DNA of 64,000 bases from IMG/VR virus record IMGVR_UViG_3300022868_000009, positions 1 to 64,000 of that record; one strand, given 5' to 3'. The notes under the pieces are model-generated. The model saw nothing but the letters and a program-made list of their open reading frames with translations. It had not been told where the DNA came from and did no database searches. The number at the start of each line of letters is the position of its first letter. The stretch's first letter is position 1. This document shows positions 8,010-49,198 of this stretch, piece after piece. The translations under genes were made by a program, and so were the position numbers.

Positions 8010-9752
8010 ATGTTTTTGACAAAAAAATTAGCAGTTACAATAAACCCTTCAAATATCAAACATTTTAAAAAATATTTTGATAATATAGAAGTTAAAGATG
8101 AAATCGTTGTCAACATTGATCAATTAAATAAAGGTAGTCAGTTCATAATTAATGTTCAATGTGATCAATGTGGTCTTAAAAAAGAACTCAAATACAAAAA
8201 TTATTTAGGTTATGGTTACATTAATGGTGATTATTTATGTAGATCATGTAAATTAAAGAAAAATAATCAAGAAAAATATGGGGTTGACAACGTTTTTCAG
8301 CTTGAGGAGACAAAAGAAAAATCTAGAAAAACATGCATGAAAAAATATGGTGTTGAATACATTTCCCAATCAAATAAAACAAAAGATAAAATAAAACAAA
8401 TAAGCATAGAAAAATATGGTGTTAATCATTTTACACAAAATGATAATATTAAAAACAAACAAAAGCAAACAAATTTAGAAAAATATGGTGTAGAAAATCC
8501 ATCACAATCCATTGAAATTAAGAAAAAGAAAGAAAATAATTGGTTAATTAAAAATGATGAAGAGAAGGAATCAATTCTTAAAAAAAGAATTAAAACGAAT
8601 CAAATTAAATATAATTCTGATCATATTTTCACAAATGATTTTTTTAAAGAAAGAATAAAACAAACGAATTTAGAAAAATATGGTGTAGAAAACCCATCAT
8701 TAAACAAGAAAGTATCACAAAAAATAATATCTTCTTTAAAAGAAACACTTTTATCTAAACAATTTGAAAACATTGATAATTTAATAAATGTTCAAGGAGA
8801 TATTTTTTTAATTAAATGTGATGCATGTGGTGATGAATTTAAAATATTAAATAGTCTTTTTTATAAAAGAAGAGAATCAAACACATTAATTTGTACAAAT
8901 TGTAACCCTGTGTCTAAAAATGTATCTGGCAAAGAAATACAATTGTTGAATTTTATTAAAGACAATTACAATGGGACAATTATTGAAAACAGCAAAAAAA
9001 TAATATCACCACTAGAATTAGATATTTATCTTCCAGATTTAAATTTAGCATTTGAATTCAATGGTATCTATTGGCATTGTGAATTATACAAAGATAATAA
9101 CTATCATTCAAACAAGACTAAAATGTGCAATAATAAAAATATAAATCTTTTTCACATCTTTGAAGATGATTGGGTTTATAAACAAGATATAGTAAAATCT
9201 ATGATTATTAACAAAATAAATAGAACAACAAATAGAATATATGCACGAAAAACAACATTAAAAATAATAACAAATAATACATTAATTAAAGAATTTTTAA
9301 ATAGTAATCATATACAAGGTTATGTTGGTTCTTTTATTAAACTGGGATTATTTTATAATGATGATATTGTAAGTTTAATGACATTTAAAAATGTTAAAGA
9401 TGGTTATGAATTAAACAGGTTTTGTAATAAATTAAACACAAATGTAATTGGTGGTGCAAGTAAATTATTTAAATATTTTACAAAAAATTACTCATTTGAT
9501 AAGATAATATCATTCTCGAATAATGATTACTCAGAAGGAAATCTATATAAAACACTAAATTTTAGATTAGATAAAAAAATAAAACCGGATTATTCTTACA
9601 TTAAGAATGATAAAAGGGAACATAAATTTAATTTCAGGAAGAAAAAATTATCTCAAAATTTCAACATTTTAAATAAAACAGAACATGAAATATGTTTTGA
9701 AAATAATATTTATAGAATATATGACAGCGGCAAATTAAAATGGGTTTATTAA
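8010..9752 (+). CDS. Hef-like putative homing endonuclease
   Basis: Same architecture as 1788-3440 (EKYGV repeats, ELDIYLPDLNLAFEFNGIYWH, GGASKLFKYF); lies between the portal and protease genes on the opposite strand. Confidence 0.75.
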   Translation: MFLTKKLAVTINPSNIKHFKKYFDNIEVKDEIVVNIDQLNKGSQFIINVQCDQCGLKKELKYKNYLGYGYINGDYLCRSCKLKKNNQEKYGVDNVFQLEETKEKSRKTCMKKYGVEYISQSNKTKDKIKQISIEKYGVNHFTQNDNIKNKQKQTNLEKYGVENPSQSIEIKKKKENNWLIKNDEEKESILKKRIKTNQIKYNSDHIFTNDFFKERIKQTNLEKYGVENPSLNKKVSQKIISSLKETLLSKQFENIDNLINVQGDIFLIKCDACGDEFKILNSLFYKRRESNTLICTNCNPVSKNVSGKEIQLLNFIKDNYNGTIIENSKKIISPLELDIYLPDLNLAFEFNGIYWHCELYKDNNYHSNKTKMCNNKNINLFHIFEDDWVYKQDIVKSMIINKINRTTNRIYARKTTLKIITNNTLIKEFLNSNHIQGYVGSFIKLGLFYNDDIVSLMTFKNVKDGYELNRFCNKLNTNVIGGASKLFKYFTKNYSFDKIISFSNNDYSEGNLYKTLNFRLDKKIKPDYSYIKNDKREHKFNFRKKKLSQNFNILNKTEHEICFENNIYRIYDSGKLKWVY

Positions 9753-9797: not shown

Positions 9798-11513
9798 TTA
9801 GAATTGAGTCTGTACTCCACCTTCATCACCGCCTTGTACTCCGCCTTCTTGTGAACCACCACCTTCACCAAAGTCACTATCGCCTTCACCACCTTCACCA
9901 AAGTCACTGCCTTCATCACCACCTTCTCCACCTGGAGCACCTCCACTATCTGGAGCACCACCGCCTTGACCTGGAGCCATTCCACCACCAGTCATTTTGT
10001 ATTTGTCGTTTTCAGCTATATCTTCATCTGTTAATTTCATAATATTTCTAACAATCCACTCAATATGTAAATAAGGATCGCCTTTTTCATCTTGTAGGTT
10101 ACCACTTAATGTAGCAGCAATATCAGATCTTTTTGCTAAATTATTTAAATATTTCCATTCTTCAAATAAATGATTTTTATTAAAAATAGATTTCAATGAA
10201 TAATGAAATAAATTATCATCTTTTAATTCAGGAAAATCTAAAATTGTTTGTATTTTTAAAGGTTTAATTATAACTTCTTTAAATAATGTTTGTAGTCTTC
10301 TTATATAATTTCCAAATTTAATTTCTTCTCTTGTCATTTCAGCACTATCACTATAAATATTACCTCCACCACTTTCTTCCTCAAATCTACTAAATGGAAT
10401 ATGAGTAGCTCTTTTAAGGTTTTTATAAAACCAATTTAACATAGAATCTTCATTTAAATCAGTACCTTGTGATTGCATTATTTCAATATCTGGTGTTCCT
10501 TCACCTGACTGTGGAAACCAAAAATCTTTACTATGAGGAATATCTGTAGAACCATTTATACTAACAGTACCCATTCTATCATCCCATTGAACATCTTCAT
10601 GGTATTCAGCCATCAATTGATAAACTTGTTGTTCAGCTTGTTGTCTTGTCAAACCTCCAACTGGAATTACAAATTTCTTATACATAGCAGCTTGATTAAT
10701 ATTATATAGTAATCTTGTTTGTTCAACTAATTTTAATTGATTATAAGGTCTAATTAAATTTTCTACATAAGATGTTTCAGCATACTCATTATTATTTGAA
10801 TAAGAAATATAAATTATTTGTGAATCTAATAAAACTCTTCTTTGTTGTGGGTTATCTGGATATTGAATCCATACAACTGTAGATGTTCCAGGATCAGTAG
10901 CAACTATCAAAGTCATTGGATCTAAGGGAACTAAATCAATTATACTTTTTTGTCTATTATCATACACTAATTCAAATGTAATATATCCATCAATTAATAA
11001 AGATTTAAAATATTGCCATGCAGTAATACCATCATTAAACCCAAAATTTATCATTAATTTTTTATAATTTTCTTGATATTTTTGTTTAATTGTATTATCA
11101 AATTCATCTGGTAAATCTTGCATTTTACAAAATTGATTATCATCATTATAAATAACAGCTTCATTTGCTATATCTTCTAAAAATCCTTTAATTTCATCTT
11201 TAATAGAATATTGTCTAAGAATTTTTCTTTTATCTTCATAAGATCTATCTAAATATGCAATATTCTTCCTATTTAATACCTTAGAGATGACCTTTTTTGT
11301 AAAAATATCATACATATTAGTTCCTGATTCAGCATTAGTTTGATTTGGATCTTCATGTATTCCAACTGCTACAGTATTCTTTAATACCATATCACCATAA
11401 TCCATTCCGAATGTACTAAGATTTCTTAATAATCTATTAAAAAATCCTTTGTTTTCAACTGTTCCACCTAGATCAGATGTAGTATTTTTTTGATAAGGGT
11501 TATATGTTGCCAC
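9798..11513 (-). CDS. gp20: Portal vertex protein (T4 gp20-like)
   Basis: YISY, ENLIRPYNQLKLVEQTRLLY, KKFVIPVGGL, KDFWFP...G..TPDIE, WFYKNLKRATHIPFSRF, ITREEIKF-like motif; G/E-rich tail. Confidence 0.9.
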   Translation of the reverse strand: MATYNPYQKNTTSDLGGTVENKGFFNRLLRNLSTFGMDYGDMVLKNTVAVGIHEDPNQTNAESGTNMYDIFTKKVISKVLNRKNIAYLDRSYEDKRKILRQYSIKDEIKGFLEDIANEAVIYNDDNQFCKMQDLPDEFDNTIKQKYQENYKKLMINFGFNDGITAWQYFKSLLIDGYITFELVYDNRQKSIIDLVPLDPMTLIVATDPGTSTVVWIQYPDNPQQRRVLLDSQIIYISYSNNNEYAETSYVENLIRPYNQLKLVEQTRLLYNINQAAMYKKFVIPVGGLTRQQAEQQVYQLMAEYHEDVQWDDRMGTVSINGSTDIPHSKDFWFPQSGEGTPDIEIMQSQGTDLNEDSMLNWFYKNLKRATHIPFSRFEEESGGGNIYSDSAEMTREEIKFGNYIRRLQTLFKEVIIKPLKIQTILDFPELKDDNLFHYSLKSIFNKNHLFEEWKYLNNLAKRSDIAATLSGNLQDEKGDPYLHIEWIVRNIMKLTDEDIAENDKYKMTGGGMAPGQGGGAPDSGGAPGGEGGDEGSDFGEGGEGDSDFGEGGGSQEGGVQGGDEGGVQTQF

Positions 11514-29426: not shown

Positions 29427-29789
29427 TTAAACACTCTCTATTTTTTTGAGTTTTAATGTTTCTATTAGATGCTCAATTTTCGGTTTTGGTAAAAAACCAT
29501 TATAAATTTTAACTTCCCCCTTCATATTAATCATAATCAATGTTGGTAAACTTTTAACACCAAACATTTCAACAAGTTCATATTCATTTTCAGCATCTAC
29601 TTTAAAAAAATCAATTTCAGAGTATTTTATTTCCAATTGTTGTAAAACAACTTGAGTAATTTTACAGGGAGCACACCATTCAGCGTAAAAATCAATAATA
29701 CATGGTTTTGAACCTATAAATTTATAATCTTCATTTTTGCTAATTTCCAAAATTTTTTCTTTTAATTCTATTGCCGTTAAGTTTTTCAT
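29427..29789 (-). CDS. trxA: Thioredoxin
   Basis: IIDFYAEWCAPCK, FFKVD, FGVKSLPTLI. Confidence 0.9.
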   Translation of the reverse strand: MKNLTAIELKEKILEISKNEDYKFIGSKPCIIDFYAEWCAPCKITQVVLQQLEIKYSEIDFFKVDAENEYELVEMFGVKSLPTLIMINMKGEVKIYNGFLPKPKIEHLIETLKLKKIESV

Positions 29790-29863
29790 ATACCCTTACA
29801 TTTGTTTTTAGTTATATATCCCTTAAATTATACGAAATAGATAAAGATTGAAGTAAACTTACT

Positions 29864-29906
29864 AAATTCAAAGAACACGTAGAAATTTTACGTGTTCTTT
29901 GAATTT
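29864..29906. terminator. 18-bp perfect inverted repeat closing the secreted-protein block
   Basis: aaattcaaagaacacgta-gaaattt-tacgtgttctttgaattt. Confidence 0.7.
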
Positions 29907-29937
29907 GTTATATTTGGTAACTTTTTCTAAATTATTT

Positions 29938-30327
29938 TTATTTTTTTATTATTCTCATAACACCTGGTAACCTTATATCAGTATTCAAATACCCTCTTTG
30001 ATTTTTATTTTGTGTAAAAAATATTGTAGCATGTGATTTATATGTTATTAATTCACCATCCATGTTTTTAACTGTTAATTCGTCTTTGCCTTTAGCTATA
30101 TAAATTGGAAAATTAGAAAATCCCCATTTTTTAAATTTCCACATACAATCCCAAGCCTTATATTCTTCTTTATTTTTTGTTTTATAAACTATTATTGAAG
30201 CATCAAATGGATCATCAACTTCTAATAATATAATTGTAGCATCACCTGGATCCATCATATTAATTACAGTTTGACTACAACAAACTAAACTTGTTAATAT
30301 TAATATTAATGTTAATATTTTTTTCAT
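29938..30327 (-). CDS. Signal-peptide protein, DUF6150-like (Bacteroidota type)
   Basis: MKKILTLILILTSLVCCSQ signal; DASIIVYK...W.F..WG repeats; family call is from memory. Confidence 0.55.
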   Translation of the reverse strand: MKKILTLILILTSLVCCSQTVINMMDPGDATIILLEVDDPFDASIIVYKTKNKEEYKAWDCMWKFKKWGFSNFPIYIAKGKDELTVKNMDGELITYKSHATIFFTQNKNQRGYLNTDIRLPGVMRIIKK

Positions 30328-30794
30328 CTTATAATAAGTTTCTTTTTATATATTTCGTTCATTGAAGTAGCAATAATAATATATGTACCAGAATTTAATC
30401 TATTCATACAATCACAATCAATTGGTTCTTTTGATTGGAATATTGAATTTAATTCAAAACTACCAGTTATAAATATATTATCATTGTGTATAACTAAACA
30501 CTTCGGATCATCAATATTTGCATCTCCAATTTGATTACACCATATAAACTCTCCATTTTCAGATAACTTTATTAAGGCAATATCCTTATTTCCAAATGAT
30601 GTAAAATTGTTTCCTAATATATTTATTGTGCCATAAAATTCAACAAGAACATATATCGAATTTTCAGAATCAGTGTAAATCGATTCCGATTCAATATTAT
30701 TTGTTCCATTTATTGGTATAGACCATACCCATCTTTGTTGAGAAAAAGATGATATGGATAAGAAAAGTAATAATATGATTAATAAATTTCTCAT
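30324..30794 (-). CDS. Truncated SBBP/beta-propeller secreted protein ending in a T9SS-CTD-like tail
   Basis: Signal peptide; DSENSIYV...FYGT...G.KDI.LIKL...G..IW; ends LNSGTYII...KKKLIIR. Confidence 0.6.
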   Translation of the reverse strand: MRNLLIILLLFLSISSFSQQRWVWSIPINGTNNIESESIYTDSENSIYVLVEFYGTINILGNNFTSFGNKDIALIKLSENGEFIWCNQIGDANIDDPKCLVIHNDNIFITGSFELNSIFQSKEPIDCDCMNRLNSGTYIIIATSMNEIYKKKLIIR

Positions 30795-32122
30795 TCAACT
30801 ATTAATTTAGTTTTATAATAACCATCAATAATAACAATATAAACACCACAAGGTAGTCCATATATTTGATTATCAACAATATTTGCTTTTATGTCTCTAC
30901 CTAATATATCAGTAATTTGAATATTTTGATAAGTACCAGATATATTAATTGATTCATTAGACGAAGCAGGATTAGGATAAAGGTTTAATGAATTATTTTC
31001 ACAATTAACATAAATTGTATTATATGTATTTGTTTTTCCATCATAATCAATTTGTTTTAACCTATAATATCCACCATTAGAATAATCTATATATTTATAG
31101 TTTATAGTTTGGTTACTATTACCATTTCCAGAAACAGTTCCTATTGATGTAAATGATATACCATCAAAACTTTTTTCAATAACAAAATAATCATTGTTAA
31201 TTTCTGATAGTGTTTCCCATTCGATTAAAACGTTATTATTTTTTGTATTACAAATTCCATTAAAAGTTATTAATTCTACAGGTAAAGGCATTATTTCACT
31301 ACCCAAAGTAACTTTTGTCCATGTTAAAGTTGAACCAAATAAATTTTTAGTGATTGGAACATTTGATCCTGTATAATCAATTACTGGTGTCCAATAATCA
31401 GGTCCTCCACCATTCACCCATTGAAACATAATTAATTCAACAGGATTATGTACATTTAATTCTTGAGGATAACAATCATGAAAAGTAACATTTGTTCCTG
31501 CGAATATTGCAGGTGCGTCTATCTGAAAATAACGAAAAACACTGTTATTTCCTGCAAAAGTACCTGTACCAGGTTGAACTAAATGTCCCCGAATAATATT
31601 TACACCTATTCCTGTCAAATTAACTGTTAAACCCAAATTGGAAATATTTCCAACAGGATTATCTCTAATTGCACGAATAGTTCCGGTTCCTAATCCATCA
31701 CTTCCTCCTGCATCTGTTGCTTTAACTCTTCTTGTAGATGCCTCATTGTTAAGTATTCCTGAATAGTTTAAATCAACCAAAGCATCTTTTAAATCAAAAT
31801 CTCCCTGTGTCATTTGTAATATATTGGAAATACTAATATCTCTACCAACATTAACACTAACACCACCTCCTATATTATTTACAGTAACATTATAAAATGC
31901 TGTTGTGTTAGCTCCTAAAATTGATTGATTAACATTACCAATAAAGTGTACTGTGCTGTTTCCAGCTATTACTATACCATTATTAGTCCAATTGCCATTA
32001 CCATCAATTAAAACTTGTACAGTGCTATTCATTACAATTTGCGCACTATTGTTTAATAATCCTTGCGAAAAAAAATTATATGATAATATCAATAATAAGA
32101 CTATAATTTGTATTTTTTTCAT
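30791..32122 (-). CDS. T9SS type A sorting-domain secreted protein
   Basis: Signal peptide; PLPVELITF, WETLSEINNDYFVIEKS.DG, YYRLKQIDYDG, LYPNPAS, ITDILGR, GVYIVII. Confidence 0.85.
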   Translation of the reverse strand: MKKIQIIVLLLILSYNFFSQGLLNNSAQIVMNSTVQVLIDGNGNWTNNGIVIAGNSTVHFIGNVNQSILGANTTAFYNVTVNNIGGGVSVNVGRDISISNILQMTQGDFDLKDALVDLNYSGILNNEASTRRVKATDAGGSDGLGTGTIRAIRDNPVGNISNLGLTVNLTGIGVNIIRGHLVQPGTGTFAGNNSVFRYFQIDAPAIFAGTNVTFHDCYPQELNVHNPVELIMFQWVNGGGPDYWTPVIDYTGSNVPITKNLFGSTLTWTKVTLGSEIMPLPVELITFNGICNTKNNNVLIEWETLSEINNDYFVIEKSFDGISFTSIGTVSGNGNSNQTINYKYIDYSNGGYYRLKQIDYDGKTNTYNTIYVNCENNSLNLYPNPASSNESINISGTYQNIQITDILGRDIKANIVDNQIYGLPCGVYIVIIDGYYKTKLIVE

Positions 32123-33768
32123 TTTCGTATTGGTTTTTTAGTCCCATATTTCCCATTTACAAGTTTATATTTTCCATGATTTGGACCTGCTGGTATTATT
32201 TCTCCAACTCTCACATGGTCTTCTATATTATAATTATATACATCCCAATCTTTTGCCCACCTAAAAATGTCTCTGCGACTAGGTTGATTTTTAGCATTAG
32301 CAGCATCAATATTATATTTTAACCAAGCTGGTCCAGGAGCTTGAACAAATCTTCCTTCACCATAGTTTGTTTTTGGTTTAGCAATAATCTGATAATCAAT
32401 TTCACCACTATTTATGCCTCCATTACGTTCAACAAGATCAAAACCTGTGGCTGATTTGTTAATAACTGCAACACCATTACATTCAAGAATATTAACTTGT
32501 AAAATTACTTTTAATGGATTGTCTGCATCTACAAAAATAATATCTACAAGTATTGGATCAAGTTCTACATGTGATTTGCCATTTACAAGTTGTACTGTTC
32601 CATAATCAACATACCAGTATTCAGGAGATTCAGGACAAGTAAGTGTTATTCTTCCATGATCTTTTGTCGAGATAATTTCACTTACAGCACCAATTCCATA
32701 TATTTTTCTGTTAGTTACTCCGTCATATGCTGTATATGCCCAATATCCGTTTCCTTGTGAATAAGCTCCCGCAGAGTATCCATAACCAGTAGCATAACCG
32801 GCATTTGGATCACTTCCTGCACCAGGACCTGAAGCAGATGTATAAACCCCAATTGCATCTTCATCGCTAGTTGCATATAGCTTAGCTCCTGTAGCACTTG
32901 TATACCATGCAGGTGTAACTCCGCCTGAATATGTGCAATTCCCATGAATTGCTGTATGTATAAATCCACCTTCATTAAGATTTACATTCATTTGCGAGTA
33001 TATTCCAGGCACATCACCATCTAAAACATCATTATCATCGCCATAAAAATATCCAGGAATCCAACAATCAGAATAACCAACAATAGCTGCTATGTTAGCA
33101 TTAAGAGTAGTTTTTCCATATACTGCAATTCTGTTAGGGTCGTTAACTAACCCATGAACAGCGGCACCCCCTACAGTTGAACCTCCAACAGTAATTGACC
33201 CGTTAAATCCTAGATAACCATAAGTTTGATTTCCTGATACATTTGAAAATCCCTGTACTGCACAAGCACCATTAACAGCACTTGTTGTTTCAAAATATCC
33301 TGCAACAGTATTAGTTGAACCAATATATTCAATACCATGTACTTCTCCATCGTCATGAACTTTAATTGCAGTATTATATTCAGGGCGGATATAGTTCATA
33401 CCAGTAGGTCTAATCCAATATTCAACATTTCCTGGAATGTTAGGTAAATTTCCTGAAAACAGCCATTTCCATTTTCCTGAAGCAGTATTCCAATAATAGT
33501 ATCCAGGGATAACATTATTTGGAGCAACTCCAGCCGTAGCAGTATTATAAATAAGTAAAGCATCTGCAGGTGCAGTTATTGGTGATATTGAATTATTTGC
33601 AGTAAGTGTTACACGAGGGATTAAGATCCCTTTGTCTGTTGAACTAATATCTAACATTGCAGATGCATTTGGAGCAACTCCTGTTGAATTTATTGCTACA
33701 TTTTGTGTAAATAACCAAACTGGTAATAAACATAATAATACTATTAAAAAATTTTTTATTTTTTTCAT
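32119..33768 (-). CDS. Bacteroidota-type secreted fibre/adhesin-like protein
   Basis: Signal peptide; NVAIN...PNASAMLDISSTDKGILIPRV.L, LLIYNT, PGYYYWN; C-terminal CPESPE...DYG...L.NG...VELD domain seen in fibre proteins. Confidence 0.75.
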   Translation of the reverse strand: MKKIKNFLIVLLCLLPVWLFTQNVAINSTGVAPNASAMLDISSTDKGILIPRVTLTANNSISPITAPADALLIYNTATAGVAPNNVIPGYYYWNTASGKWKWLFSGNLPNIPGNVEYWIRPTGMNYIRPEYNTAIKVHDDGEVHGIEYIGSTNTVAGYFETTSAVNGACAVQGFSNVSGNQTYGYLGFNGSITVGGSTVGGAAVHGLVNDPNRIAVYGKTTLNANIAAIVGYSDCWIPGYFYGDDNDVLDGDVPGIYSQMNVNLNEGGFIHTAIHGNCTYSGGVTPAWYTSATGAKLYATSDEDAIGVYTSASGPGAGSDPNAGYATGYGYSAGAYSQGNGYWAYTAYDGVTNRKIYGIGAVSEIISTKDHGRITLTCPESPEYWYVDYGTVQLVNGKSHVELDPILVDIIFVDADNPLKVILQVNILECNGVAVINKSATGFDLVERNGGINSGEIDYQIIAKPKTNYGEGRFVQAPGPAWLKYNIDAANAKNQPSRRDIFRWAKDWDVYNYNIEDHVRVGEIIPAGPNHGKYKLVNGKYGTKKPIRK

Positions 33769-33772
33769 ATTT

Positions 33773-33859
33773 TTATTTTACAATTAATTTTATTTTATAA
33801 TATCCATCAATAATAACAATATAAATTCCACTATTTAAACCTTCTATTTGATTATCCAT
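33773..33859 (-). pseudogene. Orphan T9SS-CTD tail remnant (28 aa)
   Basis: MDNQIEGLNSGIYIVIIDGYYKIKLIVK* is near-identical to the end of 30791-32122 (VDNQIYGLPCGVYIVIIDGYYKTKLIVE). Confidence 0.65.
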
Positions 33860-33879
33860 ATTTTGTTTTATAAATTTTT

Positions 33880-34224
33880 TCATTCTTTTTTGTTTTTCAT
33901 TTTTTCTTTAATATACATATCTTTACAATTTTTATAATTTATTATATTATCTATATTAGATTTATAATAACATTTACCATAAAAACGCATTTCAATTTTT
34001 TTAAATAATACATTGTAATCTTTGTGATTTTTTGTTAATTTTACAAAAATTAAATATTCTGCTTCACAGGTTGATATTACTTTACAACCCAAAGATTTTA
34101 CATATATTATAACTTCTTGGAAATCATTATCATCGGATACATATCCAAATAGGCAATGATTTTCTTTTTGACTAAATGCCAAAGTTGAAATCATCATAAA
34201 TAAGTAAATTAGGAATTTTTTCAT
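33880..34224 (-). CDS. Signal-peptide hypothetical protein
   Basis: MKKFLIYLFMMISTLAFSQ. Confidence 0.7.
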   Translation of the reverse strand: MKKFLIYLFMMISTLAFSQKENHCLFGYVSDDNDFQEVIIYVKSLGCKVISTCEAEYLIFVKLTKNHKDYNVLFKKIEMRFYGKCYYKSNIDNIINYKNCKDMYIKEKMKNKKE

Positions 34225-34332
34225 TTTTTATATCATTCTTTTTATTTATAGACGTAAAATTTGATTTAAGGTTGCCTTAAATTTGATCTTTTACCTCATT
34301 ATTTATATATTAAAATTTTAAAAAAAATTATA

Positions 34333-34361
34333 AAAAAAAGTGATGTTTAAATCACTTTTTT
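34333..34361. terminator. Intrinsic terminator downstream of the release factor region
   Basis: aaaaaaaagtgat-gtttaa-atcactttttt. Confidence 0.55.
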
Positions 34362-34553
34362 TATTTTTTCTTTTTGGGAAAGAATTTTTTGATAGGATGA
34401 TTTTTCTTTTTCTGCTCATCATCATACTCCTTTTTAAGTTTCTCTACTATTCTATCAAAATTTTTATCATCCATAATATTTATCCTCTACTTTAGTATAC
34501 TTATAATATATGTTTTTGTTTTAAATTTTTGACTAATCGACCAAAATCTTACA

Positions 34554-35232
34554 TTAATGTAAAAGTTCAATCTTACCCTTAATTATATTTTTATAACTCG
34601 ATTTACTATTAGTAATATGATCAACAATTATACCAGTTTTTAAATTATAAGTCCTTCTTCTATTTGACCTAGATCTTAAACCTATTTGTTCATTTCTACC
34701 ATTAGAATAAGACTCATTATATTCTTTATTAAATTTATCTTGTAATCTTTTCTTTAATTCTTTCCACGCACCAGATTCATTTTTATGTTGATTTCTACCA
34801 TCAACTCTTACTTGAATATTAGTAGGGATATGTTTTAAAATAACACAACTCATAGTTCTATTTCTATGTTGACCGCCCGGTCCAGAACCCATAGTATATA
34901 TTACTTCTACATCATTTTTATCAATATTAACTGAAATATCTTGTTTTTCATCTAAAACTGCAACAGAAACTGTTGATGTGTGCATTCTACCTTTTGATTC
35001 TGTTGGTGGTACACGTTGCCATTTATGATTACCTATTTCATTTGAGAAGAATTCTTTTACACCATCACCGCTAAAGACATAAATCAACTAAACCTTCTCT
35101 TTCATTAAGAGAAATTAGTTTAAATCCCTTTAACTTTAATGTTTTTAAGTAAATGTTTTTCATATCTTGTACTAGAAGTTTAGCATCCTCGCCACCTTCT
35201 TGATCTCTGATTTCTATAATAATTTTTTCCAT
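34554..35232 (-). CDS. prfA: Class I peptide chain release factor, RF1-type (PxT), lacking domain 1; two frames joined by a +1 frameshift at CTT TAG C (35076-35070); about 225 aa
   Basis: Frame 0 from ATG 35232: MEKIIIEIRDQEGGEDAKLLVQDMKNIY...LVDLCL*; +1 frame: SGDG...QRVPPTESKGRMHTS...GSGPGGQHRN...RRRTYN...DH. Together they match RF1 domains 2-4 continuously. Confidence 0.85.
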
Positions 35233-44589: not shown

Positions 44590-45627
44590 TTAAGGTAAAA
44601 ATTGATCTGAAAAATCACCATACTTCTTAATGGCTCTTATATCTGTTGAACTTATATATTCATACTCCTTGTCACAAGGAATATAAATTACTTTTAATTG
44701 TGGATACATCTTAGTCATATAAAACATCAATTTATTTTCTGCTTCTAAATCATATCCGTTTCTTAATCCTCTAATTAATGTTATATCACCTGTTTGTGAT
44801 TTTAAGAAATCAGTTAATAATCCATCATAATTTGTTACTTCTCTATACTTTAAAGTATATTTAAGATTATTTAATTCTTTATCAAACTGTTCTAAATTAA
44901 CATTTTTAGAATCATTTTTTCCTTTAGCCACAATAACTTTATCAAAGATTTTTTCTCCTTTTTCTAATATATTTAAATGACCTTTATGAAAAGGATTAAA
45001 TGAACCTCCATATACAGCAATTTTAGGTACTCTATTTTTGATAACTTCTATCAAAGAAGGTATATTATTAGATATAGCTAGACCACCAAGTTCTATATTA
45101 TTAGAAAGAAACTCTATTCTTTTCTCTTTATAAATTGAATAATTTGCAAATTGATATTCTTTCATTATCAATTTTTCTATTCTAATCATCTCTGCCAAAT
45201 TAGTTCTTAATGAAGATGTATCAATATTTGAAAATAATTCTTCTAATTTTGTTTCTGGTTTCATTGTTTCTGTAGCTCTAATTAAAGCAAAAACTTTATC
45301 TTTAAATATAGACATTTCTAATATTGATTTATTCCATATAGAATCTAAATAATTTAAAGATGATTCTTCCATTGAGAGACCATTATCTTTATTTTTACCA
45401 TCAACTAAATTCCAAGGTCTATAATCCCAGTCATGGAATATAGCCGCAATAGTCAAAATATCAAAATCTTTTTCATCTAATTCAAGTTCTTCAATTTTTA
45501 ATAACATTGGTTCCAGGTGATTTTCTAAATTATGGTAAAATCTCCATGGTTGAGTCCAAACTTCAATGACAGTTTTAGTATTTATTTCAATACCATATTT
45601 TTTAAATAATTTATCTACTGATATCAT
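44590..45627 (-). CDS. coaD: HD-domain protein fused to phosphopantetheine adenylyltransferase
   Basis: N-terminal RFYHNLENH...AAIFHD; C-terminal AVYGGSFNPFHKGH, LIRGLRNGYD..E, YISSTDIR. Confidence 0.85.
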   Translation of the reverse strand: MISVDKLFKKYGIEINTKTVIEVWTQPWRFYHNLENHLEPMLLKIEELELDEKDFDILTIAAIFHDWDYRPWNLVDGKNKDNGLSMEESSLNYLDSIWNKSILEMSIFKDKVFALIRATETMKPETKLEELFSNIDTSSLRTNLAEMIRIEKLIMKEYQFANYSIYKEKRIEFLSNNIELGGLAISNNIPSLIEVIKNRVPKIAVYGGSFNPFHKGHLNILEKGEKIFDKVIVAKGKNDSKNVNLEQFDKELNNLKYTLKYREVTNYDGLLTDFLKSQTGDITLIRGLRNGYDLEAENKLMFYMTKMYPQLKVIYIPCDKEYEYISSTDIRAIKKYGDFSDQFLP

Positions 45628-45965
45628 TTTTCTATGTAATTAAGTTTTTTTTCTTTGGGTTCTAATATATCTTCTGTAAATTGAAGTTCCTTTTCTGAAA
45701 AATATTCAGATTCTGTACTATTTGTAATAGTATCACCAGTATATAAATAATTATATACCTGTTTATCAACCATAAATATTCTAATAGTAGTTGGTGTTTT
45801 AATTGTTACTTGATATACTAATGAATCTTTTGAAATATCATGATAATTATATTCATAATCTATAATAACACCAGCTGGTAATTCATCTATACAAACTTTT
45901 CTAATATCTCTTACACATGACATTAATAAAAAGACTGATAATATTAATATTATATATTTTTTCAT
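45624..45965 (-). CDS. Putative lipoprotein
   Basis: MKKYIILILSVFLLMSC lipobox-type signal. Confidence 0.65.
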   Translation of the reverse strand: MKKYIILILSVFLLMSCVRDIRKVCIDELPAGVIIDYEYNYHDISKDSLVYQVTIKTPTTIRIFMVDKQVYNYLYTGDTITNSTESEYFSEKELQFTEDILEPKEKKLNYIEK

Positions 45966-46195
45966 AATTCTAATTTTTGTTTACGTGTTAATTGTTTAAT
46001 CCTGTATTCTTCTTTAGCCGCTTCTGATTTTGTTTCAAACTCCCAAAACTTATAGATTTTTACTGGTAATTTAGAACCTCTTAATAATTTTGATCCCTTA
46101 CCATTATTATGTGTTTCAATTCTTTTCTCTAAATTATTGGTAATTCCACAATATAAACTATCATCTGAGCAAGTAAGTAAATAAGTAAACCACAT
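45962..46195 (-). CDS. Small GIY-YIG nuclease (UPF0213/YhbQ-like)
   Basis: FTYLLTCSDDSLYCGITNNLEKRIETHNNGKG, EAAKEEYRIKQL. Confidence 0.85.
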   Translation of the reverse strand: MWFTYLLTCSDDSLYCGITNNLEKRIETHNNGKGSKLLRGSKLPVKIYKFWEFETKSEAAKEEYRIKQLTRKQKLEL

Positions 46196-46386
46196 TAATT
46201 TACTTCTATTTCATCACCAGTTATTGTAATTGTACAAGGAATTCCTAATCCTCTTACACCTTTTTCAACTTCTGCTTCATATTTTTCACCATTATATTCA
46301 AATTCTACAATATAACCAGACCAAATTCCAGAATACGTTCCATCAGGAACTTCTGTTTCTACTTTTACCATTTTTTTAATTTTCAT
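46195..46386 (-). CDS. Hypothetical protein
   Basis: 63-aa ORF coupled to its neighbour. Confidence 0.55.
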   Translation of the reverse strand: MKIKKMVKVETEVPDGTYSGIWSGYIVEFEYNGEKYEAEVEKGVRGLGIPCTITITGDEIEVN

Positions 46387-46520
46387 ATTTAAGTTCTTTT
46401 ATATATTCTTCTGTATTTTTAACTAATCTCTGATAAAATGTACTTTCAGGATTCTTTTCTAATTCTAATTTATATCTTTTTAAAGATTTTTCATAAATCT
46501 TAATCATCATACTATTGTTT

Positions 46521-47771
46521 CTATTTTTCATTTAAAAAATCTTCATATTGTTTAAGATATTCATCTGCATTTGGTGAAACCTCTAAGATATCAACTATCT
46601 GCGGGATAATTTCCCCTTTTTTCGCAATTGATACTCTAGCACCAGGAAATACTTTATTTTTAATTATATATCCAAGATTATGTAGACTAGCTCTTGAAAC
46701 AATAGTACCATCTAACTCAACTGGTTTTAACATTGCAACACCTGTAAATTCTCCGTCTTTTCCTAAAGTCCAATCAATATCTAATATAACTGTTTCGGTA
46801 TTGTTTGGTGGAAATTTAATTGCTACCATACTTTTAGGATGGTGTGATGTAACACCCATTTTATTTCTTAAAGATTCGGGATATTTTAAAACTATGCCAT
46901 CTAACCAAAATGGACATCTTTTTCTATATTTTTTAAACTCTTTATAGATTTTATCAAAATCATCAATTGATTTAAGCGTCATTATAAATGGTTTATATTT
47001 ATTATTAAATCCATTTTCTTCTAAAATATTCATAGTTTCAATAACTGGATAATTTCCATCATCTGTCACAGCTACCATATCATAAGCTACAAATGTTAAA
47101 TCTTGTATTTGCTTTAAACTATATTCTTCACCACTAATCAAACCACCAATATAATTTCTTGGATTTGATATACAACCTTCTTCTGATTCATCATATTTTT
47201 CAACCCATAAATCTTCTTCAATAACTAACTCACCCCTAATCTGATATTTATGTTCTTTTAAAGATATTTCAGCAGGTACGATATGTCTTACTTTTTCGGT
47301 TCTATCTTTACCATTCTTAGTATCATTGCCTCTAGTTAATGCTTGAACAAACTTACCATTTTCATAAATCAATTCAAAACCATTACCATCATATTTTCCA
47401 CTACATTCTATATATTCTGCCTTTCTTCTAGACAAGAATAAATTTAAAGTATGTAAAGGATAATTATTTTCATCTTCTACTTGTATTTTCTCTAATGATA
47501 ACATTGATGTTGGGTGTGGATATTTAGCTTCATCTTTTTCGTCAATATCAATAATATTAGCAGGTTCTAATCCTAATTTTTTAATTTGTTTAATACTAGG
47601 AAAATCAACTAATTTAGTTACTTCCAAAATTAAACTATGTTTTGTATCTTTAAGTTTTTGTTCAAATTTATCAAATTGTGCATCATTAATGGTAGGTTTA
47701 AATAAAATATAATATTCATACTTATATCTTAAATATTGTTCACACATTTGTTTAATTGTCTTTAAATCCAT
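46521..47771 (-). CDS. ligA: NAD+-dependent DNA ligase (adenylation plus OB domains only)
   Basis: YY...P.I.DAQFD (Ia), MLSLEK, KYDG, TRG, RGE, NPRN, DGIV, AIKF, RASLHN, GEIIPQI; ends at 416 aa without Zn/HhH/BRCT. Confidence 0.85.
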   Translation of the reverse strand: MDLKTIKQMCEQYLRYKYEYYILFKPTINDAQFDKFEQKLKDTKHSLILEVTKLVDFPSIKQIKKLGLEPANIIDIDEKDEAKYPHPTSMLSLEKIQVEDENNYPLHTLNLFLSRRKAEYIECSGKYDGNGFELIYENGKFVQALTRGNDTKNGKDRTEKVRHIVPAEISLKEHKYQIRGELVIEEDLWVEKYDESEEGCISNPRNYIGGLISGEEYSLKQIQDLTFVAYDMVAVTDDGNYPVIETMNILEENGFNNKYKPFIMTLKSIDDFDKIYKEFKKYRKRCPFWLDGIVLKYPESLRNKMGVTSHHPKSMVAIKFPPNNTETVILDIDWTLGKDGEFTGVAMLKPVELDGTIVSRASLHNLGYIIKNKVFPGARVSIAKKGEIIPQIVDILEVSPNADEYLKQYEDFLNEK

Positions 47772-47938
47772 CTAATATTTCTTTTAGTACTTTAATATTT
47801 TTAATTTCTTTATCATAAAGGTCAACACTAAGTCTTCTCATTAATGGTAACAATTCTTCTTTTTCCTTTATAATTCTTGATATTTTTTCTTTATAATCCA
47901 TAATATAATCATTTTATTCAAAAATAAAAAATTACAAG

Positions 47939-48565
47939 TTAATTTAATTCTTGAATATTTGTTTTTTGTTCATTGAACAATTCATCACCTTTTTTTATCT
48001 TTACATCTTTTATAAAAGAATTTTTTCTTATTTTTGCCGCATTAACTCTATAATCCATAAGTACTTTTGTTATTTTTTCATCTACTTCTTTTGATGTTTG
48101 TTTTTCAGTATTATAATTATAAACTGGCCCATCAGCCCATAATCTATAATATTTCTCTGTTTCACTTATTTCTATAATATGTCCCTTGTTAATATTAGTA
48201 ATCTCAATAAAACTAATTTTTGGATAATCTAATAATTTTTTAGAAACTAATTTAGTTTTAGTATTTTCAATAATTTCAACAATGCCATCATCAATATTTA
48301 TTGATTCATGTGACATTTCATGCCTATAAATCAAGCTATTTAATCTATCAATAGAACGTTCAGAATCCATAAATAATGACTCACCGCCTGGATACTCACA
48401 CCATTTATTAACTGTGCCATAATATTGATCTCCATTTTCTAATATTACTAAATAATAATTTTCACATTCTGTTTGTTTAATCAATTCTATTCTTGAATTA
48501 TCTGTATTCATACAACTTACAAATAGAAATAAAAGTGATGTTAAAATTAATAGTATTCTTTTCAT
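47939..48565 (-). CDS. Putative lipoprotein, paralog family A
   Basis: FVSC lipobox; YLVILENGDQY...WCEYPGG. Confidence 0.7.
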   Translation of the reverse strand: MKRILLILTSLLFLFVSCMNTDNSRIELIKQTECENYYLVILENGDQYYGTVNKWCEYPGGESLFMDSERSIDRLNSLIYRHEMSHESINIDDGIVEIIENTKTKLVSKKLLDYPKISFIEITNINKGHIIEISETEKYYRLWADGPVYNYNTEKQTSKEVDEKITKVLMDYRVNAAKIRKNSFIKDVKIKKGDELFNEQKTNIQELN

Positions 48566-48570
48566 ATTTA

Positions 48571-48816
48571 TTATTTTTTTAAATTTTCTATTTCTGTATT
48601 TTTTATTAAATCGTTTAAATTATTAGTAAGACTTGGACTAACATAATCACCATCAGGATAAGTACACCAAATACATGTATCATCACTAAAATATTGATCT
48701 CCATTTTCTAGAGTAACAAAATATTTACCATCATATATTTTAATATCTGCATTATTTGTTGTTCCACAACTTATCATTAAAAACAAAAATGATAAAATTA
48801 ATAATATTCTTTTCAT
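48571..48816 (-). CDS. Putative lipoprotein, paralog family A
   Basis: MISC lipobox; YFVTLENGDQY...WCTYPDG. Confidence 0.7.
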   Translation of the reverse strand: MKRILLILSFLFLMISCGTTNNADIKIYDGKYFVTLENGDQYFSDDTCIWCTYPDGDYVSPSLTNNLNDLIKNTEIENLKK

Positions 48817-48820
48817 GTTT

Positions 48821-49198
48821 TTAATTTAATGGGTTGATATTACTTTTAATTTCTCTTTCTTCTAAATCCTTTTCTCTTTTATTGAGTTCCTTCTCTTTAT
48901 TTTCTAGATTTTTTAATTTTTCTAATTGAGGCTCAATTTCATTTTTCATTTCATAACCCCTAATCAAAGTATTAATCTCTCCTCTGTTTATAGAACCACA
49001 ATTACAAACAGAAACCATATCACCACTTGGGTAATAATACCAATCATCAACATTACCAGTAATTTCAATTTCTTCTGAAGGTAGTGTAATAAAATATTTA
49101 TCGTTTTCTAATTTTTGTATTTCTGCATCATCTAAATTAGATGAGCAACCGGTAAGCATTAATACTAATAGTATTAAGGGGTAAAATAATTTTTTCAT
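48821..49198 (-). CDS. Putative lipoprotein, paralog family A (diverged)
   Basis: LTGC lipobox; YFITLP...WYYYPSG. Confidence 0.65.
   Translation of the reverse strand: MKKLFYPLILLVLMLTGCSSNLDDAEIQKLENDKYFITLPSEEIEITGNVDDWYYYPSGDMVSVCNCGSINRGEINTLIRGYEMKNEIEPQLEKLKNLENKEKELNKREKDLEEREIKSNINPLN

What the first reader, a model, noticed from the sequence alone, without database searches (positions are those of the whole stretch)
29864..34361. Block of five Bacteroidota-type secreted proteins with T9SS C-terminal domains in a lytic-type phage
Seen: five co-oriented signal-peptide genes between two strong hairpins; one intact type A T9SS CTD, one truncated SBBP protein ending in a CTD-like tail, an orphan 28-aa CTD remnant (33773-33859) nearly identical to the intact one, and a fibre/adhesin-like protein. 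Established: T9SS is restricted to Bacteroidota and relatives. Inference: it identifies the host phylum, and the phage may use the host T9SS to display or secrete proteins (receptor masking, adhesion); the duplicated CTDs indicate ongoing recombination.
Basis: partly seen in the sequence, partly recalled or inferred. Interest (0 to 1): 0.65.

Follow-up and report, generated by a model that had tools for sequence, protein, structure and literature searches.

The report
Host-like secreted-protein island in a megaphage
A giant salt-lake phage that probably infects Bacteroidota carries a strain-variable island of host-like secreted-protein genes, one with a complete type IX secretion tag, so it may re-dress the surface of the cell it infects; one similar case has been published.

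Summary
Between two strong hairpins (29864-29906 and 34332-34362) lie five co-oriented genes with signal peptides that end in Gln, plus a 36-codon remnant.

- **T9SS tags:** only ph443 (30791-32122) has a complete type A T9SS C-terminal domain (CTD), scoring TIGR04183 29.5 bits against a cut-off of 23. ph156 is two SBBP blades fused to the last 32 residues of a CTD. ph36 is the last 27 residues of a different CTD gene, which is still intact in a co-occurring strain.
- **Captured operon:** ph549 is a fibre-like PTL_trimer protein. The ph549-ph443 pair is a Bacteroidota chromosomal two-gene unit.
- **Not a chimera:** the block sits in the same phage context in at least 10 contigs from several samples, and its GC3 equals the phage background.
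- **The phage:** its portal is 62.5% identical to that of the 735-kb Mahaphage. All five huge relatives tested also carry TIGR04183-positive ORFs.
- **Precedent:** Cryophage (Bellas 2020).

The Bacteroidota host and ongoing recombination are supported. Export through the T9SS and any role at the cell surface remain inference.

Side finding: the neighbouring RF1-like gene has a conserved CUU-UAG-C +1 frameshift site.

The parts
34332..34362 (-). Upstream boundary hairpin: A-tract, 5-bp GUGAU/AUCAC stem, then a U-run. It looks like a bidirectional terminator and lies between the RF1-like gene region and ph114.
   Evidence: I12; z -4.06
33880..34224 (-). ph114: a small secreted protein. Its signal peptide ends ...AFSQ. 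It has conserved cysteines and belongs to a small orphan family.
   Evidence: No Pfam, NCBIfam or PHROG hit. 16 representative clusters among 1.84 billion proteins. The alignment shows a signal peptide followed by Q in most members, and conserved C53, C85 and C100. One homologue lies next to a bacterial Mur-ligase gene.
33773..33883 (-). ph36: remnant of a T9SS CTD gene. Nine start-like codons are fused in frame to the last 27 codons of a CTD. The breakpoint is at 33860/33861.
   Evidence: TIGR04183 scores 9.9-14 bits, end of the model only. 27/27 aa identical to the tail of a full-length CTD gene in variants L010/L011, where that CTD scores 24.1 bits over model positions 1-72.
32119..33768 (-). 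ph549: a fibre-like secreted protein with three parts. The first is a signal peptide followed by Q22. The second is an N-terminal PTL_trimer module, about residues 23-100 (33469-33702). The third is a Gly-rich middle region followed by a conserved C-terminal domain, residues 361-465 (32374-32688), that resembles tail-fibre tips. It has no CTD.
   Evidence: PF26696 is precomputed for this protein and its homologues. It is 54% identical over its full length to Bacteroidota proteins. All 64 invariant columns of the family alignment are kept. The C-domain scores Z 9.1-7.8 against the Pam1 tailspike receptor-binding domain, the R2 pyocin fibre and AP22 gp53. The model is poor overall (pLDDT 44).
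30791..32122 (-). ph443: a T9SS type A cargo protein with four parts: signal peptide followed by Q20; a beta-rich N-domain of unassigned fold (31292-32062); an Fn3-like domain (30989-31285); and a complete CTD (30797-30982).
   Evidence: CTD above both cut-offs; 60% identical full-length homologues in Bacteroidota metagenome-assembled genomes (MAGs), annotated as T9SS type A sorting-domain proteins; AF2 pLDDT 86; Fn3-like domain Z about 10.
30324..30794 (-). ph156: an in-frame deletion chimera. It has a signal peptide, about two SBBP beta-propeller blades (30441-30740), and the last 32 residues of a CTD (30327-30422).
   Evidence: Variant L110 carries the full Fn3+CTD gene, whose tail is 25/32 identical.
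29938..30327 (-). ph129: a small secreted protein of the DUF6150/'Septknot' family (PF19647). It scores just below the Pfam cut-off here.
   Evidence: Homologue P0244 sits on a bacterial chromosome contig with PFOR, GyrA and GSIII genes. dN/dS is 0.32 against the 92%-identical strain variant.
29864..29906 (-). Downstream boundary hairpin: an 18-20 bp perfect stem between ph129 and the thioredoxin gene.
   Evidence: z -8.05, 0 of 200 shuffles

Best explanation
The block is a flexible, moron-like island of Bacteroidota-derived secreted-protein genes. It lies between the RF1-like gene and the thioredoxin gene of a huge, 25%-GC phage of the Mahaphage clade from a salt lake.

**Core (shown).** The core is a bacterial two-gene unit captured whole: a PTL_trimer fibre-like protein (ph549), translationally coupled to a protein with a T9SS type A CTD (ph443). 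Around it lie two small secreted proteins (ph114, ph129) and two in-frame deletion remnants of further CTD cargo genes (ph36, ph156).

**Rearrangement (shown).** Recombination and deletion with breakpoints inside the CTD-coding and N-terminal coding segments keep reshuffling the island between co-occurring strains.

**Mechanism (inferred).**
- During infection the host Sec system and signal peptidase I export all five proteins, with Gln at position +1.
- The host T9SS then carries ph443 across the outer membrane and probably anchors it to the surface. The infected cell surface is thereby remodelled.
- The most likely purpose is superinfection exclusion or receptor masking. Altered adhesion is the alternative.
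- ph36 and ph156 are probably not T9SS substrates.
For: **Real and phage-borne**
- The identical gene order, with the same flanks (RF1, tRNAs, thioredoxin, methyltransferase), occurs in at least 10 contigs from JGI, Logan and ENA assemblies of different samples.
- One Logan contig spans 29000-35000 with 0 differences. A contig from another study bridges thioredoxin, ph129, ph156 and ph443.
- GC3 of the block genes is 0.11-0.16, against a phage background of 0.137 +/- 0.034.
- Major head, protease and portal genes lie in the same window.

**Host-derived**
- ph443 and ph549 have full-length Bacteroidota homologues at 54-61% identity.
- The pair is adjacent in the same order, overlapping or nearly abutting, beside housekeeping genes in L007/L022 and L008/L079. 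It is also adjacent in L032, L046 and L018.
- The ph549 family was found in 127 GTDB Bacteroidota genomes. No relative was found in IMG/VR or INPHARED.

**T9SS tag**.

**Still functional**
- Invariant family residues are retained.
- ph129 has dN/dS 0.32.

**Flexible island**
- Variants L010/L011/L110 carry the intact versions of both remnants and a ph549(1-89)::Fn3::CTD fusion.
- Related phage L101 has RF1 directly next to thioredoxin with no block.

**Clade trait**: 5 of 5 related huge phages have ORFs above the TIGR04183 cut-off, against 0 of 14 control genomes.

**Precedent**: Cryophage has variable T9SS cargo genes (PMC7468147).
Against: - There are no expression data; no RNA run holds the region.
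- No promoter was identified. The sigma-70 scan gave 46 sites against 46.7 expected from shuffles.
- Only one of the five proteins has a complete CTD. How ph549 would cross the outer membrane is unknown.
- Two of the six ORFs are remnants, which also fits decay.
- The host and its T9SS have not been identified. CTDs can be species-specific (PMC11285876), so compatibility is assumed.
- The RF1-thioredoxin adjacency rests on one distant relative, with the thioredoxin gene in the opposite orientation.
- The donor lineage is unresolved.
Confidence: 0.55

Rival explanations
1. Functionless passenger DNA. A piece of host chromosome was picked up by illegitimate recombination and is now decaying, so the intact ORFs are only the parts not yet hit.
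For: ph36 and ph156 are deletion remnants. A second CTD protein elsewhere in the genome (84091-85020) lacks the last part of its CTD, covering model positions 1-56 of 72. Strains differ by deletions.
Against: - ph549 and ph443 keep all invariant family residues and have no stops or frameshifts.
- GC3 is fully ameliorated to the phage value, implying long residence without loss.
- ph129 has dN/dS 0.32.
- Both deletions are in frame.
- The same arrangement persists in many samples.
- CTD-bearing ORFs recur in 5 of 5 related huge phages.
Confidence: 0.2
2. The proteins serve adhesion or aggregation, or act as secreted 'public goods', rather than excluding other phages. For example, the fibre-like trimer could glue infected cells to particles or to susceptible neighbours, helping the host survive or the progeny spread.
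For: - The ph549 C-domain resembles carbohydrate- or receptor-binding tips of tail fibres and tailspikes.
- PTL_trimer co-occurs with C1q, collagen and Peptidase_S74 in Bacteroidota surface proteins.
- Bacterial homologues are chromosomal and therefore have a cellular role.
Against: No ligand is known. The ph549 model is poor (pLDDT 44). Nothing in the data separates this reading from superinfection exclusion.
Confidence: 0.15
3. ph549 and ph443 are virion parts of the phage itself, such as a tail fibre, a receptor-binding protein or an Ig/Fn3 decoration protein.
For: The ph549 C-domain is like a tail-fibre tip. ph443 has an Fn3-like domain, as many virion decoration proteins do.
Against: - Both carry cleavable Sec signal peptides with Q at +1. 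This sends them out of the cytoplasm, where virions assemble.
- Their homologues are bacterial chromosomal genes next to EF-P, LpxD, HflX and RNase E/G.
- No relative was found in 2.9 million IMG/VR contigs or 50,697 phage records.
- A CTD has no known role in a virion.
- There are no PHROG hits.
Confidence: 0.07
4. Assembly chimera: a host fragment was mis-joined into a phage contig.
For: Bacterial-type genes are bounded by hairpin repeats. Overall GC is raised at 32-33 kb. A few short-sided joints (20-24 nt) appear in Logan contigs, including one that would skip 29770-34357.
Against: - The same junctions appear in at least 10 contigs from different samples and three assemblers, including a second 344,577-bp contig.
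- Depth is uniform at 15x in X1, and there is an independent bridging contig in X5.
- GC3 equals the phage background. The higher GC of ph549 comes from its Gly/Ala-rich composition.
Confidence: 0.02

Closest known systems
Cryophage (MT820023): variable T9SS type A cargo genes in a 76-kb Bacteroidetes phage from cryoconite (Bellas et al. 2020, PMC7468147)
   Same: Both are phage-encoded proteins with T9SS type A sorting domains. In both, the genes lie in flexible 'metagenomic islands' that differ between near-identical phage variants. Both come from cold environments. [quoted passage not shown]
   Different: - The Cryophage cargo are an endoglucanase, a GH39 and a PA14 protein. Here the cargo domain is unassigned, and it is paired with a tail-fibre-like PTL_trimer protein.
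- The phage here is a Mahaphage-clade megaphage (at least 345 kb).
- A whole bacterial two-gene unit was captured.
- Deletion remnants and their intact counterparts are both visible.
- No sequence relationship to Cryophage was tested.
T9SS type A CTD cargo of Bacteroidota (TIGR04183 / PF18962; for example P. gingivalis RgpB and F. johnsoniae cargo)
   Same: ph443 has a Sec signal peptide, an Fn3-like linker domain and a C-terminal domain of about 63 aa that scores above both curated cut-offs. It carries the ...YPNP..., G-x-Y and terminal K-L-I-V-type motifs. It has full-length homologues annotated as T9SS type A sorting-domain proteins.
   Different: It is encoded by a phage. Secretion, CTD cleavage and anchoring have not been shown. 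The host T9SS is unidentified, and CTDs can be incompatible between species (PMC11285876).
Phage morons and surface-modifying conversion genes (for example lambda lom/bor, T5 llp, P22 sieA; recalled from general knowledge, not tested here)
   Same: An accessory gene block is bracketed by terminator-like hairpins. It is inserted between genes that are adjacent in a relative, encodes envelope-targeted proteins, and is dispensable for virion formation.
   Different: The block uses a phylum-specific secretion tag and carries a multi-gene operon. It is in a phage with no evidence of lysogeny. No exclusion phenotype has been shown.
Q-rule signal-peptide proteins of Porphyromonas gingivalis phages (Matrishin et al. 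2023, PMC10367356)
   Same: These are phage proteins of unknown function whose signal peptides expose an N-terminal Gln. They are read as adaptation to the Bacteroidota export machinery, with potential to modify the outer membrane.
   Different: Those are temperate phages of an oral pathogen, and the main text of that paper does not mention the T9SS. The proteins are unrelated.

Membership tests
T9SS type A cargo (TIGR04183 / PF18962) | A C-terminal domain at the extreme C-terminus that matches the model above the curated cut-off over its full length | tested here: met
   ph443: TIGR04183 29.5 bits (cut-off 23), model positions 1-71 of 72; PF18962 27.8 bits (cut-off 27). An in-house CTD HMM gives 39.2 bits.
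T9SS type A cargo (TIGR04183 / PF18962) | The same full-length CTD in ph156 and ph36 | tested here: not met
   ph156 scores 13.4-14.9 bits, model positions 47-72 only. ph36 scores 9.9-14 bits, model positions 38/43-72 only. The whole 7-strand sandwich is needed for secretion (PMC11285876).
T9SS type A cargo (TIGR04183 / PF18962) | An N-terminal Sec signal peptide for export to the periplasm | tested here: met
   The n-region, h-region and Q are seen by inspection. Q20 is nearly invariant in the family alignment. No SignalP run was possible.
T9SS type A cargo (TIGR04183 / PF18962) | The host has a T9SS; secretion depends on the CTD; the CTD is cleaved and the protein anchored | not testable with these tools
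   The host is unidentified, and no culture or proteome exists.
PTL_trimer proteins (PF26696) | Match to the PF26696 model | tested here: inconclusive
   The local Pfam copy lacks the model, and ph549 gave 0 hits. Precomputed annotation assigns PF26696 to ph549, to its homologues and to the 215-aa variant that keeps only ph549 residues 1-89. Homology to family members reaches E 1e-173.
SBBP beta-propeller proteins (PF06739 / NF047494) | A complete multi-blade propeller scoring above the cut-off | tested here: not met
   ph156 scores PF06739 16.5 bits (cut-off 20.5) and NF047494 28 bits (cut-off 400). About two blades align to a longer SBBP protein in L052.
DUF6150 / Septknot (PF19647) | Match above the gathering score | tested here: inconclusive
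   ph129 scores 24.8 bits (cut-off 27), E 2.2e-5. Its 56%-identical homologue P0244 carries PF19647.
Phage moron / flexible island | Absent between the same flanking genes in a related phage, and bounded by its own transcription signals | tested here: inconclusive
   L101 has RF1 and thioredoxin 12 bp apart with no block. However, it is a distant relative (61% and 39% identity) and the thioredoxin gene is inverted. There are terminator-like hairpins on both sides. No promoter was identified.
Mahaphage clade of huge phages (Al-Shayeb et al. 2020) | Structural proteins cluster with the 634-735 kb genomes and the Lak phages | tested here: met
   The portal is 62.5% identical to LR756501/LR756503 (735 kb), 50-51% to the 634-642 kb genomes and 31% to Lak phages. 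This is a best-hit result only; no tree was built. The clade and its host prediction come from PMC7162821.

The most novel reading that the evidence does not exclude
T9SS cargo display may be a conserved strategy of the Mahaphage clade. Under this reading, the conserved coding ends of the cargo genes (the 5' signal-peptide segment and the 3' Fn3/CTD segment) act as portable homology arms. The phage population can then shuffle N-terminal 'payload' domains, including a tail-fibre-like trimer. Each strain would dress its infected host in a different surface coat, to exclude competing phages or mask receptors.
Probability: 0.25. Interest if true: 0.7.

Novelty: new member of a known kind. Interest (0 to 1): 0.5.

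Why it matters
**Host marker.** A complete T9SS sorting tag, together with Q-rule signal peptides, ties an uncultured megaphage of roughly 700 kb to Bacteroidota. The marker is sequence-intrinsic and works independently of CRISPR spacers.

**Generality.** This is the second documented case of phage-encoded T9SS cargo in a strain-variable island. All five related huge phages tested also carry such ORFs, so the trait may be general in this clade rather than a curiosity.

**What an experiment could show.** If ph443 is exported by the T9SS, phages can use a phylum-specific secretion system to remodel the surface of infected cells. That would bear on superinfection exclusion, on phage-host arms races in Bacteroidota, and on how bacterial surface-protein operons move through viral gene pools.

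Tried and rejected
- **Whole-cassette homology.** I asked whether the whole five-gene block is homologous to the five-gene cassette around the ph443 homologue in L005. Only ph443 matches, so this was rejected.
- **Relatives in phage collections.**
  - blastn of the block against 50,697 phage records found nothing.
  - ph549 and ph443, as single proteins and as a profile, found no relatives in IMG/VR.
  - An exact CTD-tail DNA pattern found nothing in IMG/VR.
  - The 215-aa flanking protein found nothing in IMG/VR.
- **PHROGs.** No hits for the five proteins.
- **PDB profile search with the ph549 alignment.** No hits.
- **AF2 model of the ph549 monomer.** Poor (pLDDT 44). Only residues about 361-465 could be compared with known folds.
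- **Foldseek and VIA searches with the ph443 model.** Only the Fn3-like domain was assigned.
- **Complex prediction on ph549 with ph443.** 'No answer'. This is not evidence either way, so I make no binding claim.
- **Donor lineage.** Only the quick tree finished. The phage branch falls among Bacteroidota in an unresolved polytomy.
- **Sigma-70 promoter scan.** Equal to the shuffle expectation, so uninformative.
- **Protein Atlas for ph114.** Scores of 0.80, which is noise level.
- **Expression.** No RNA run holds the region.
- **Code check around the RF1 relatives.** Reading TGA or TAG as sense barely changes long-ORF coverage, so this gave no clear evidence of genome-wide recoding.
Full report
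**What the window is**

The window is the first 64 kb of a 344,634-bp IMG/VR virus contig. Its GC content is 25% and CheckV rates it 48% complete. It carries a major head protein, a head protease and a portal gene, two large homing endonucleases, an NAD-dependent ligase and ten tRNAs.

The portal protein is 62.5% identical to that of the 735-kb phage LR756501/LR756503. It is 50-51% identical to the portals of the 634-642 kb genomes and 31% identical to those of the Lak phages. This places the phage, by best hits only, in the Mahaphage clade. Members of that clade above 634 kb are predicted to replicate in Bacteroidetes (PMC7162821).

The contig comes from salt-lake metagenomes and is found in many runs. 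No tyrosine integrase was found in the part held.

**The observation**

Six ORFs on the minus strand lie between a hairpin at 34332-34362 (z -4.06) and an 18-20 bp hairpin at 29864-29906 (z -8.05). In order, they are ph114, ph36, ph549, ph443, ph156 and ph129. Four of the junctions are 4-bp overlaps.

The five larger proteins start with a basic n-region and a hydrophobic h-region, followed by Gln. So do the other signal-peptidase-I-type candidates in the genome. This is the Bacteroidetes Q-rule (PMC5837995). It has been noted before in Porphyromonas gingivalis phages (PMC10367356). The Gln is invariant in the ph549 family and nearly invariant in the ph443 family.

**CTDs (T9SS C-terminal sorting domains)**

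- **ph443.** The full-length protein gave no hit for either CTD model (TIGR04183 or PF18962) in the family scans, probably because of HMMER's composition filters. The six-frame search gave 28.9 bits. The last 84 residues alone gave TIGR04183 29.5 bits (cut-off 23; model 1-71 of 72) and PF18962 27.8 bits (cut-off 27).
- **Rest of the genome.** A CTD HMM that I built from homologues found only four CTD-like stretches in the 344 kb: ph443, ph156, ph36 and a LamG-CTD protein at 84091-85020. That last CTD stops at model position 56 of 72.
- **ph156.** It has two SBBP-like blades, aligning to a longer SBBP protein in L052, joined to the last 32 residues of a CTD.
- **ph36.** It has nine start-like codons joined in frame to the last 27 codons of a CTD.

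**Strain variants explain the remnants**

A DNA pattern from the CTD tail pulled a 1,061-bp JGI contig (L010) out of the metagenome collection. Protein look-ups then added an ENA contig (L011) and L110/L111.

- **L010 and L011.** They are 99.7% identical to the window over only 359 bp (33502-33860).
  - Upstream of that core they hold a gene of at least 302 aa. It has an Fn3-like module and a complete CTD (24.1 bits, model 1-72). Its last 27 residues are identical to ph36.
  - Downstream they hold a 215-aa fusion of ph549 residues 1-89 with another Fn3+CTD, followed by a new signal-peptide gene.
- **L110.** It holds a full Fn3+CTD gene whose tail is 25/32 identical to the end of ph156. A 90%-identical ph129 follows it.

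Each strain therefore carries both ancestral and derived arrangements. The breakpoints lie inside the CTD-coding and N-terminal coding segments.

**Origin**

ph443 has full-length relatives at 55-61% identity in Bacteroidota metagenome-assembled genomes. One more distant relative (46% identity) is named a T9SS type A sorting-domain protein. The two closest whose surroundings I read sit next to greA, HIT and TonB-receptor genes.

ph549 belongs to the PF26696 PTL_trimer family (precomputed annotation) and is 54% identical to Bacteroidota proteins. In GTDB, 127 species representatives encode a relative, and all 80 loci kept are Bacteroidota. No relative was found in IMG/VR or INPHARED.

The ph549-like gene is immediately followed by a ph443-like gene in several places:
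- L007/L022 and L008/L079, beside efp, lpxD, hflX and RNase E/G;
- L032, L046 and L018.

The phage therefore holds a bacterial two-gene unit. A quick tree nests the phage protein among Bacteroidota without resolving a donor.

ph129 is a weak DUF6150/Septknot match. A 56%-identical homologue lies on a 26%-GC bacterial contig with PFOR, gyrA and GSIII genes. ph114 belongs to a family of 16 representative clusters of small Cys-containing proteins, most with a signal peptide followed by Q. One member lies beside a Mur-ligase gene.

**Not an artefact**

- The identical gene order with the same phage flanks is present in at least 10 contigs from JGI, Logan and ENA assemblies, including a second 344,577-bp contig.
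- A Logan contig spans 29000-35000 with no differences, at a uniform 15x depth. A contig from another study bridges thioredoxin to ph443.
- GC3 of the block genes is 0.11-0.16, against a phage background of 0.137 +/- 0.034. The bacterial homologues have GC3 of 0.13-0.31. The higher total GC of ph549 comes from its amino-acid composition.

**Structure**

- **ph443.** It folds well (pLDDT 86). It has a beta-rich N-domain (residues 21-277) of unassigned fold, an Fn3-like domain (280-378, Z about 10) and the CTD.
- **ph549.** It folds poorly as a monomer (pLDDT 44). Residues 361-465 resemble receptor-binding tips: the Pam1 tailspike (Z 9.1, rmsd 1.6 over 71 residues), the R2 pyocin fibre (Z 8.2) and AP22 gp53 (Z 7.8). 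In the Atlas, PTL_trimer co-occurs with Peptidase_S74, C1q and collagen. 'Fibre/adhesin-like' is therefore a fair description. The Z values are at the tool's borderline.

**Context and precedent**

Related phage L101, from the same sample series, has RF1 and thioredoxin 12 bp apart with no block. It is, however, distant, and its thioredoxin gene is inverted.

All five related huge phages (462-735 kb) carry one to three ORFs above the TIGR04183 cut-off, against none in 14 control genomes. One of these, in LR756500, is a 369-aa protein with a Q-rule signal peptide, an Fn3-like module and a CTD, lying among phage genes.

Bellas et al. 2020 described three variable T9SS type A cargo genes in the 76-kb Cryophage. 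[quoted passage not shown] No paper in the library combines 'huge phages' with 'type IX secretion'.

**Interpretation**

- **Shown.** This is a real, long-resident, strain-variable island of Bacteroidota-type secreted-protein genes. It has one complete T9SS tag and two remnants.
- **Inferred.** All five proteins are exported by Sec. ph443 is exported by the T9SS and probably anchored to the surface. The result is surface remodelling, with superinfection exclusion or receptor masking as the most likely role and adhesion as the alternative.
- **Unexplained.** How ph549, which lacks a CTD, would reach the surface. A ph549-ph443 complex prediction gave no answer, so I make no binding claim.
- **Selection.** ph129 has dN/dS 0.32, and ph549 and ph443 retain the invariant family residues. 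Both argue against pure decay.

**Side finding**

The RF1-like gene next to the block (34554-35232) is split at CTT-TAG-C. A +1 shift there restores the RF1 motif ...L-SGDGV.... The 12-nt block TGTCTTTAGCGG is invariant in five phages whose RF proteins are only 51-61% identical. Three further relatives instead read in one frame through two in-frame TGA codons. A 2025 survey found no programmed frameshift in bacterial prfA and no TAG in prfB frameshift sites (PMC12421855).

Noticed in passing
window 34554-35232 (minus strand); junction about 35068-35079: The phage RF1-like gene has GGQ and a PxT-type 'VPPTES' motif and lacks domain 1. It is split into a 53-aa ORF ending CTT-TAG and a 177-aa ORF in the +1 frame. 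A +1 slip at CUU-UAG-C restores the conserved RF1 '...L-SGDGV' motif. This mirrors the prfB CUU-UGA-C autoregulatory site, but with the RF1-specific stop codon. The 12-nt block TGTCTTTAGCGG is invariant in the window and in L101-L104, whose RF proteins are 51-61% identical to the window's. PMC12421855 reports no programmed frameshift in bacterial prfA.
   Followed up: partly
L105:7845-8516, L106:7848-8516, L107:7845-8516: Three more distant phage RF1 homologues have no frameshift. Instead they have two in-frame TGA codons at conserved positions, aligned with Cys (and once Lys) in the frameshifted homologues. Reading TGA as sense barely changes long-ORF coverage of these loci. Whether this is local read-through regulation or recoding is open.
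   Followed up: partly
whole contig G000 (window = 1-64000): The portal (9798-11513) is 62.5% identical to that of the 735-kb LR756501/LR756503, the largest published phage genome, and 50-51% identical to the portals of the 634-642 kb genomes. CheckV calls the 344.6-kb contig 48% complete. This is probably half of a Mahaphage-clade genome of about 700 kb from a salt lake.
   Followed up: partly
W01-W05 (LR756500, LR756501, LR756504, LR745206, LR756502); L112:4449-5558: All five related huge phages carry one to three ORFs with a TIGR04183 match above the cut-off (up to 49 bits). One is a 369-aa protein in LR756500 with a Q-rule signal peptide, an Fn3-like module and a CTD. These records are unannotated, and the main text of the original paper does not mention secretion.
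   Followed up: partly
G000:C1:84091-85020 (outside the window; L001:1477-2406): A second T9SS-type protein in the same phage has a Q-rule signal peptide, Laminin_G_3 (37 bits) and a CTD (PF18962 35 bits, TIGR04183 27 bits). The CTD ends early, at model position 56 of 72, so its last strand or strands are missing.
   Followed up: partly
window 45624-49198 (minus strand): A cluster of four small genes with lipoprotein-type signal peptides (lipobox Cys): 45624-45965, 47939-48565, 48571-48816 and 48821-49198.
   Followed up: no
window 29770 / 34357 and other joints (tables 5 and 5c): Logan contigs of X1, X4 and X5 show joints with short sides (20-24 nt). One of them, 29770->34357, would remove almost exactly the whole block. 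The sides are too short to trust. The joints could be terminator-hairpin look-alikes or a block-less variant.
   Followed up: no
window 1788-3440 and 8010-9752: Two large (550 and 580 aa) paralogous HNH/homing-endonuclease genes bracket the major head, protease and portal module.
   Followed up: no
L108 (ENA contig, 160,997 bp; 26% GC): A bacterial chromosome contig (PFOR, gyrA, GSIII) has a GC content as low as the phage's. It encodes the closest non-phage homologue of ph129 (56% identity). It may be a clue to the host lineage.
   Followed up: no
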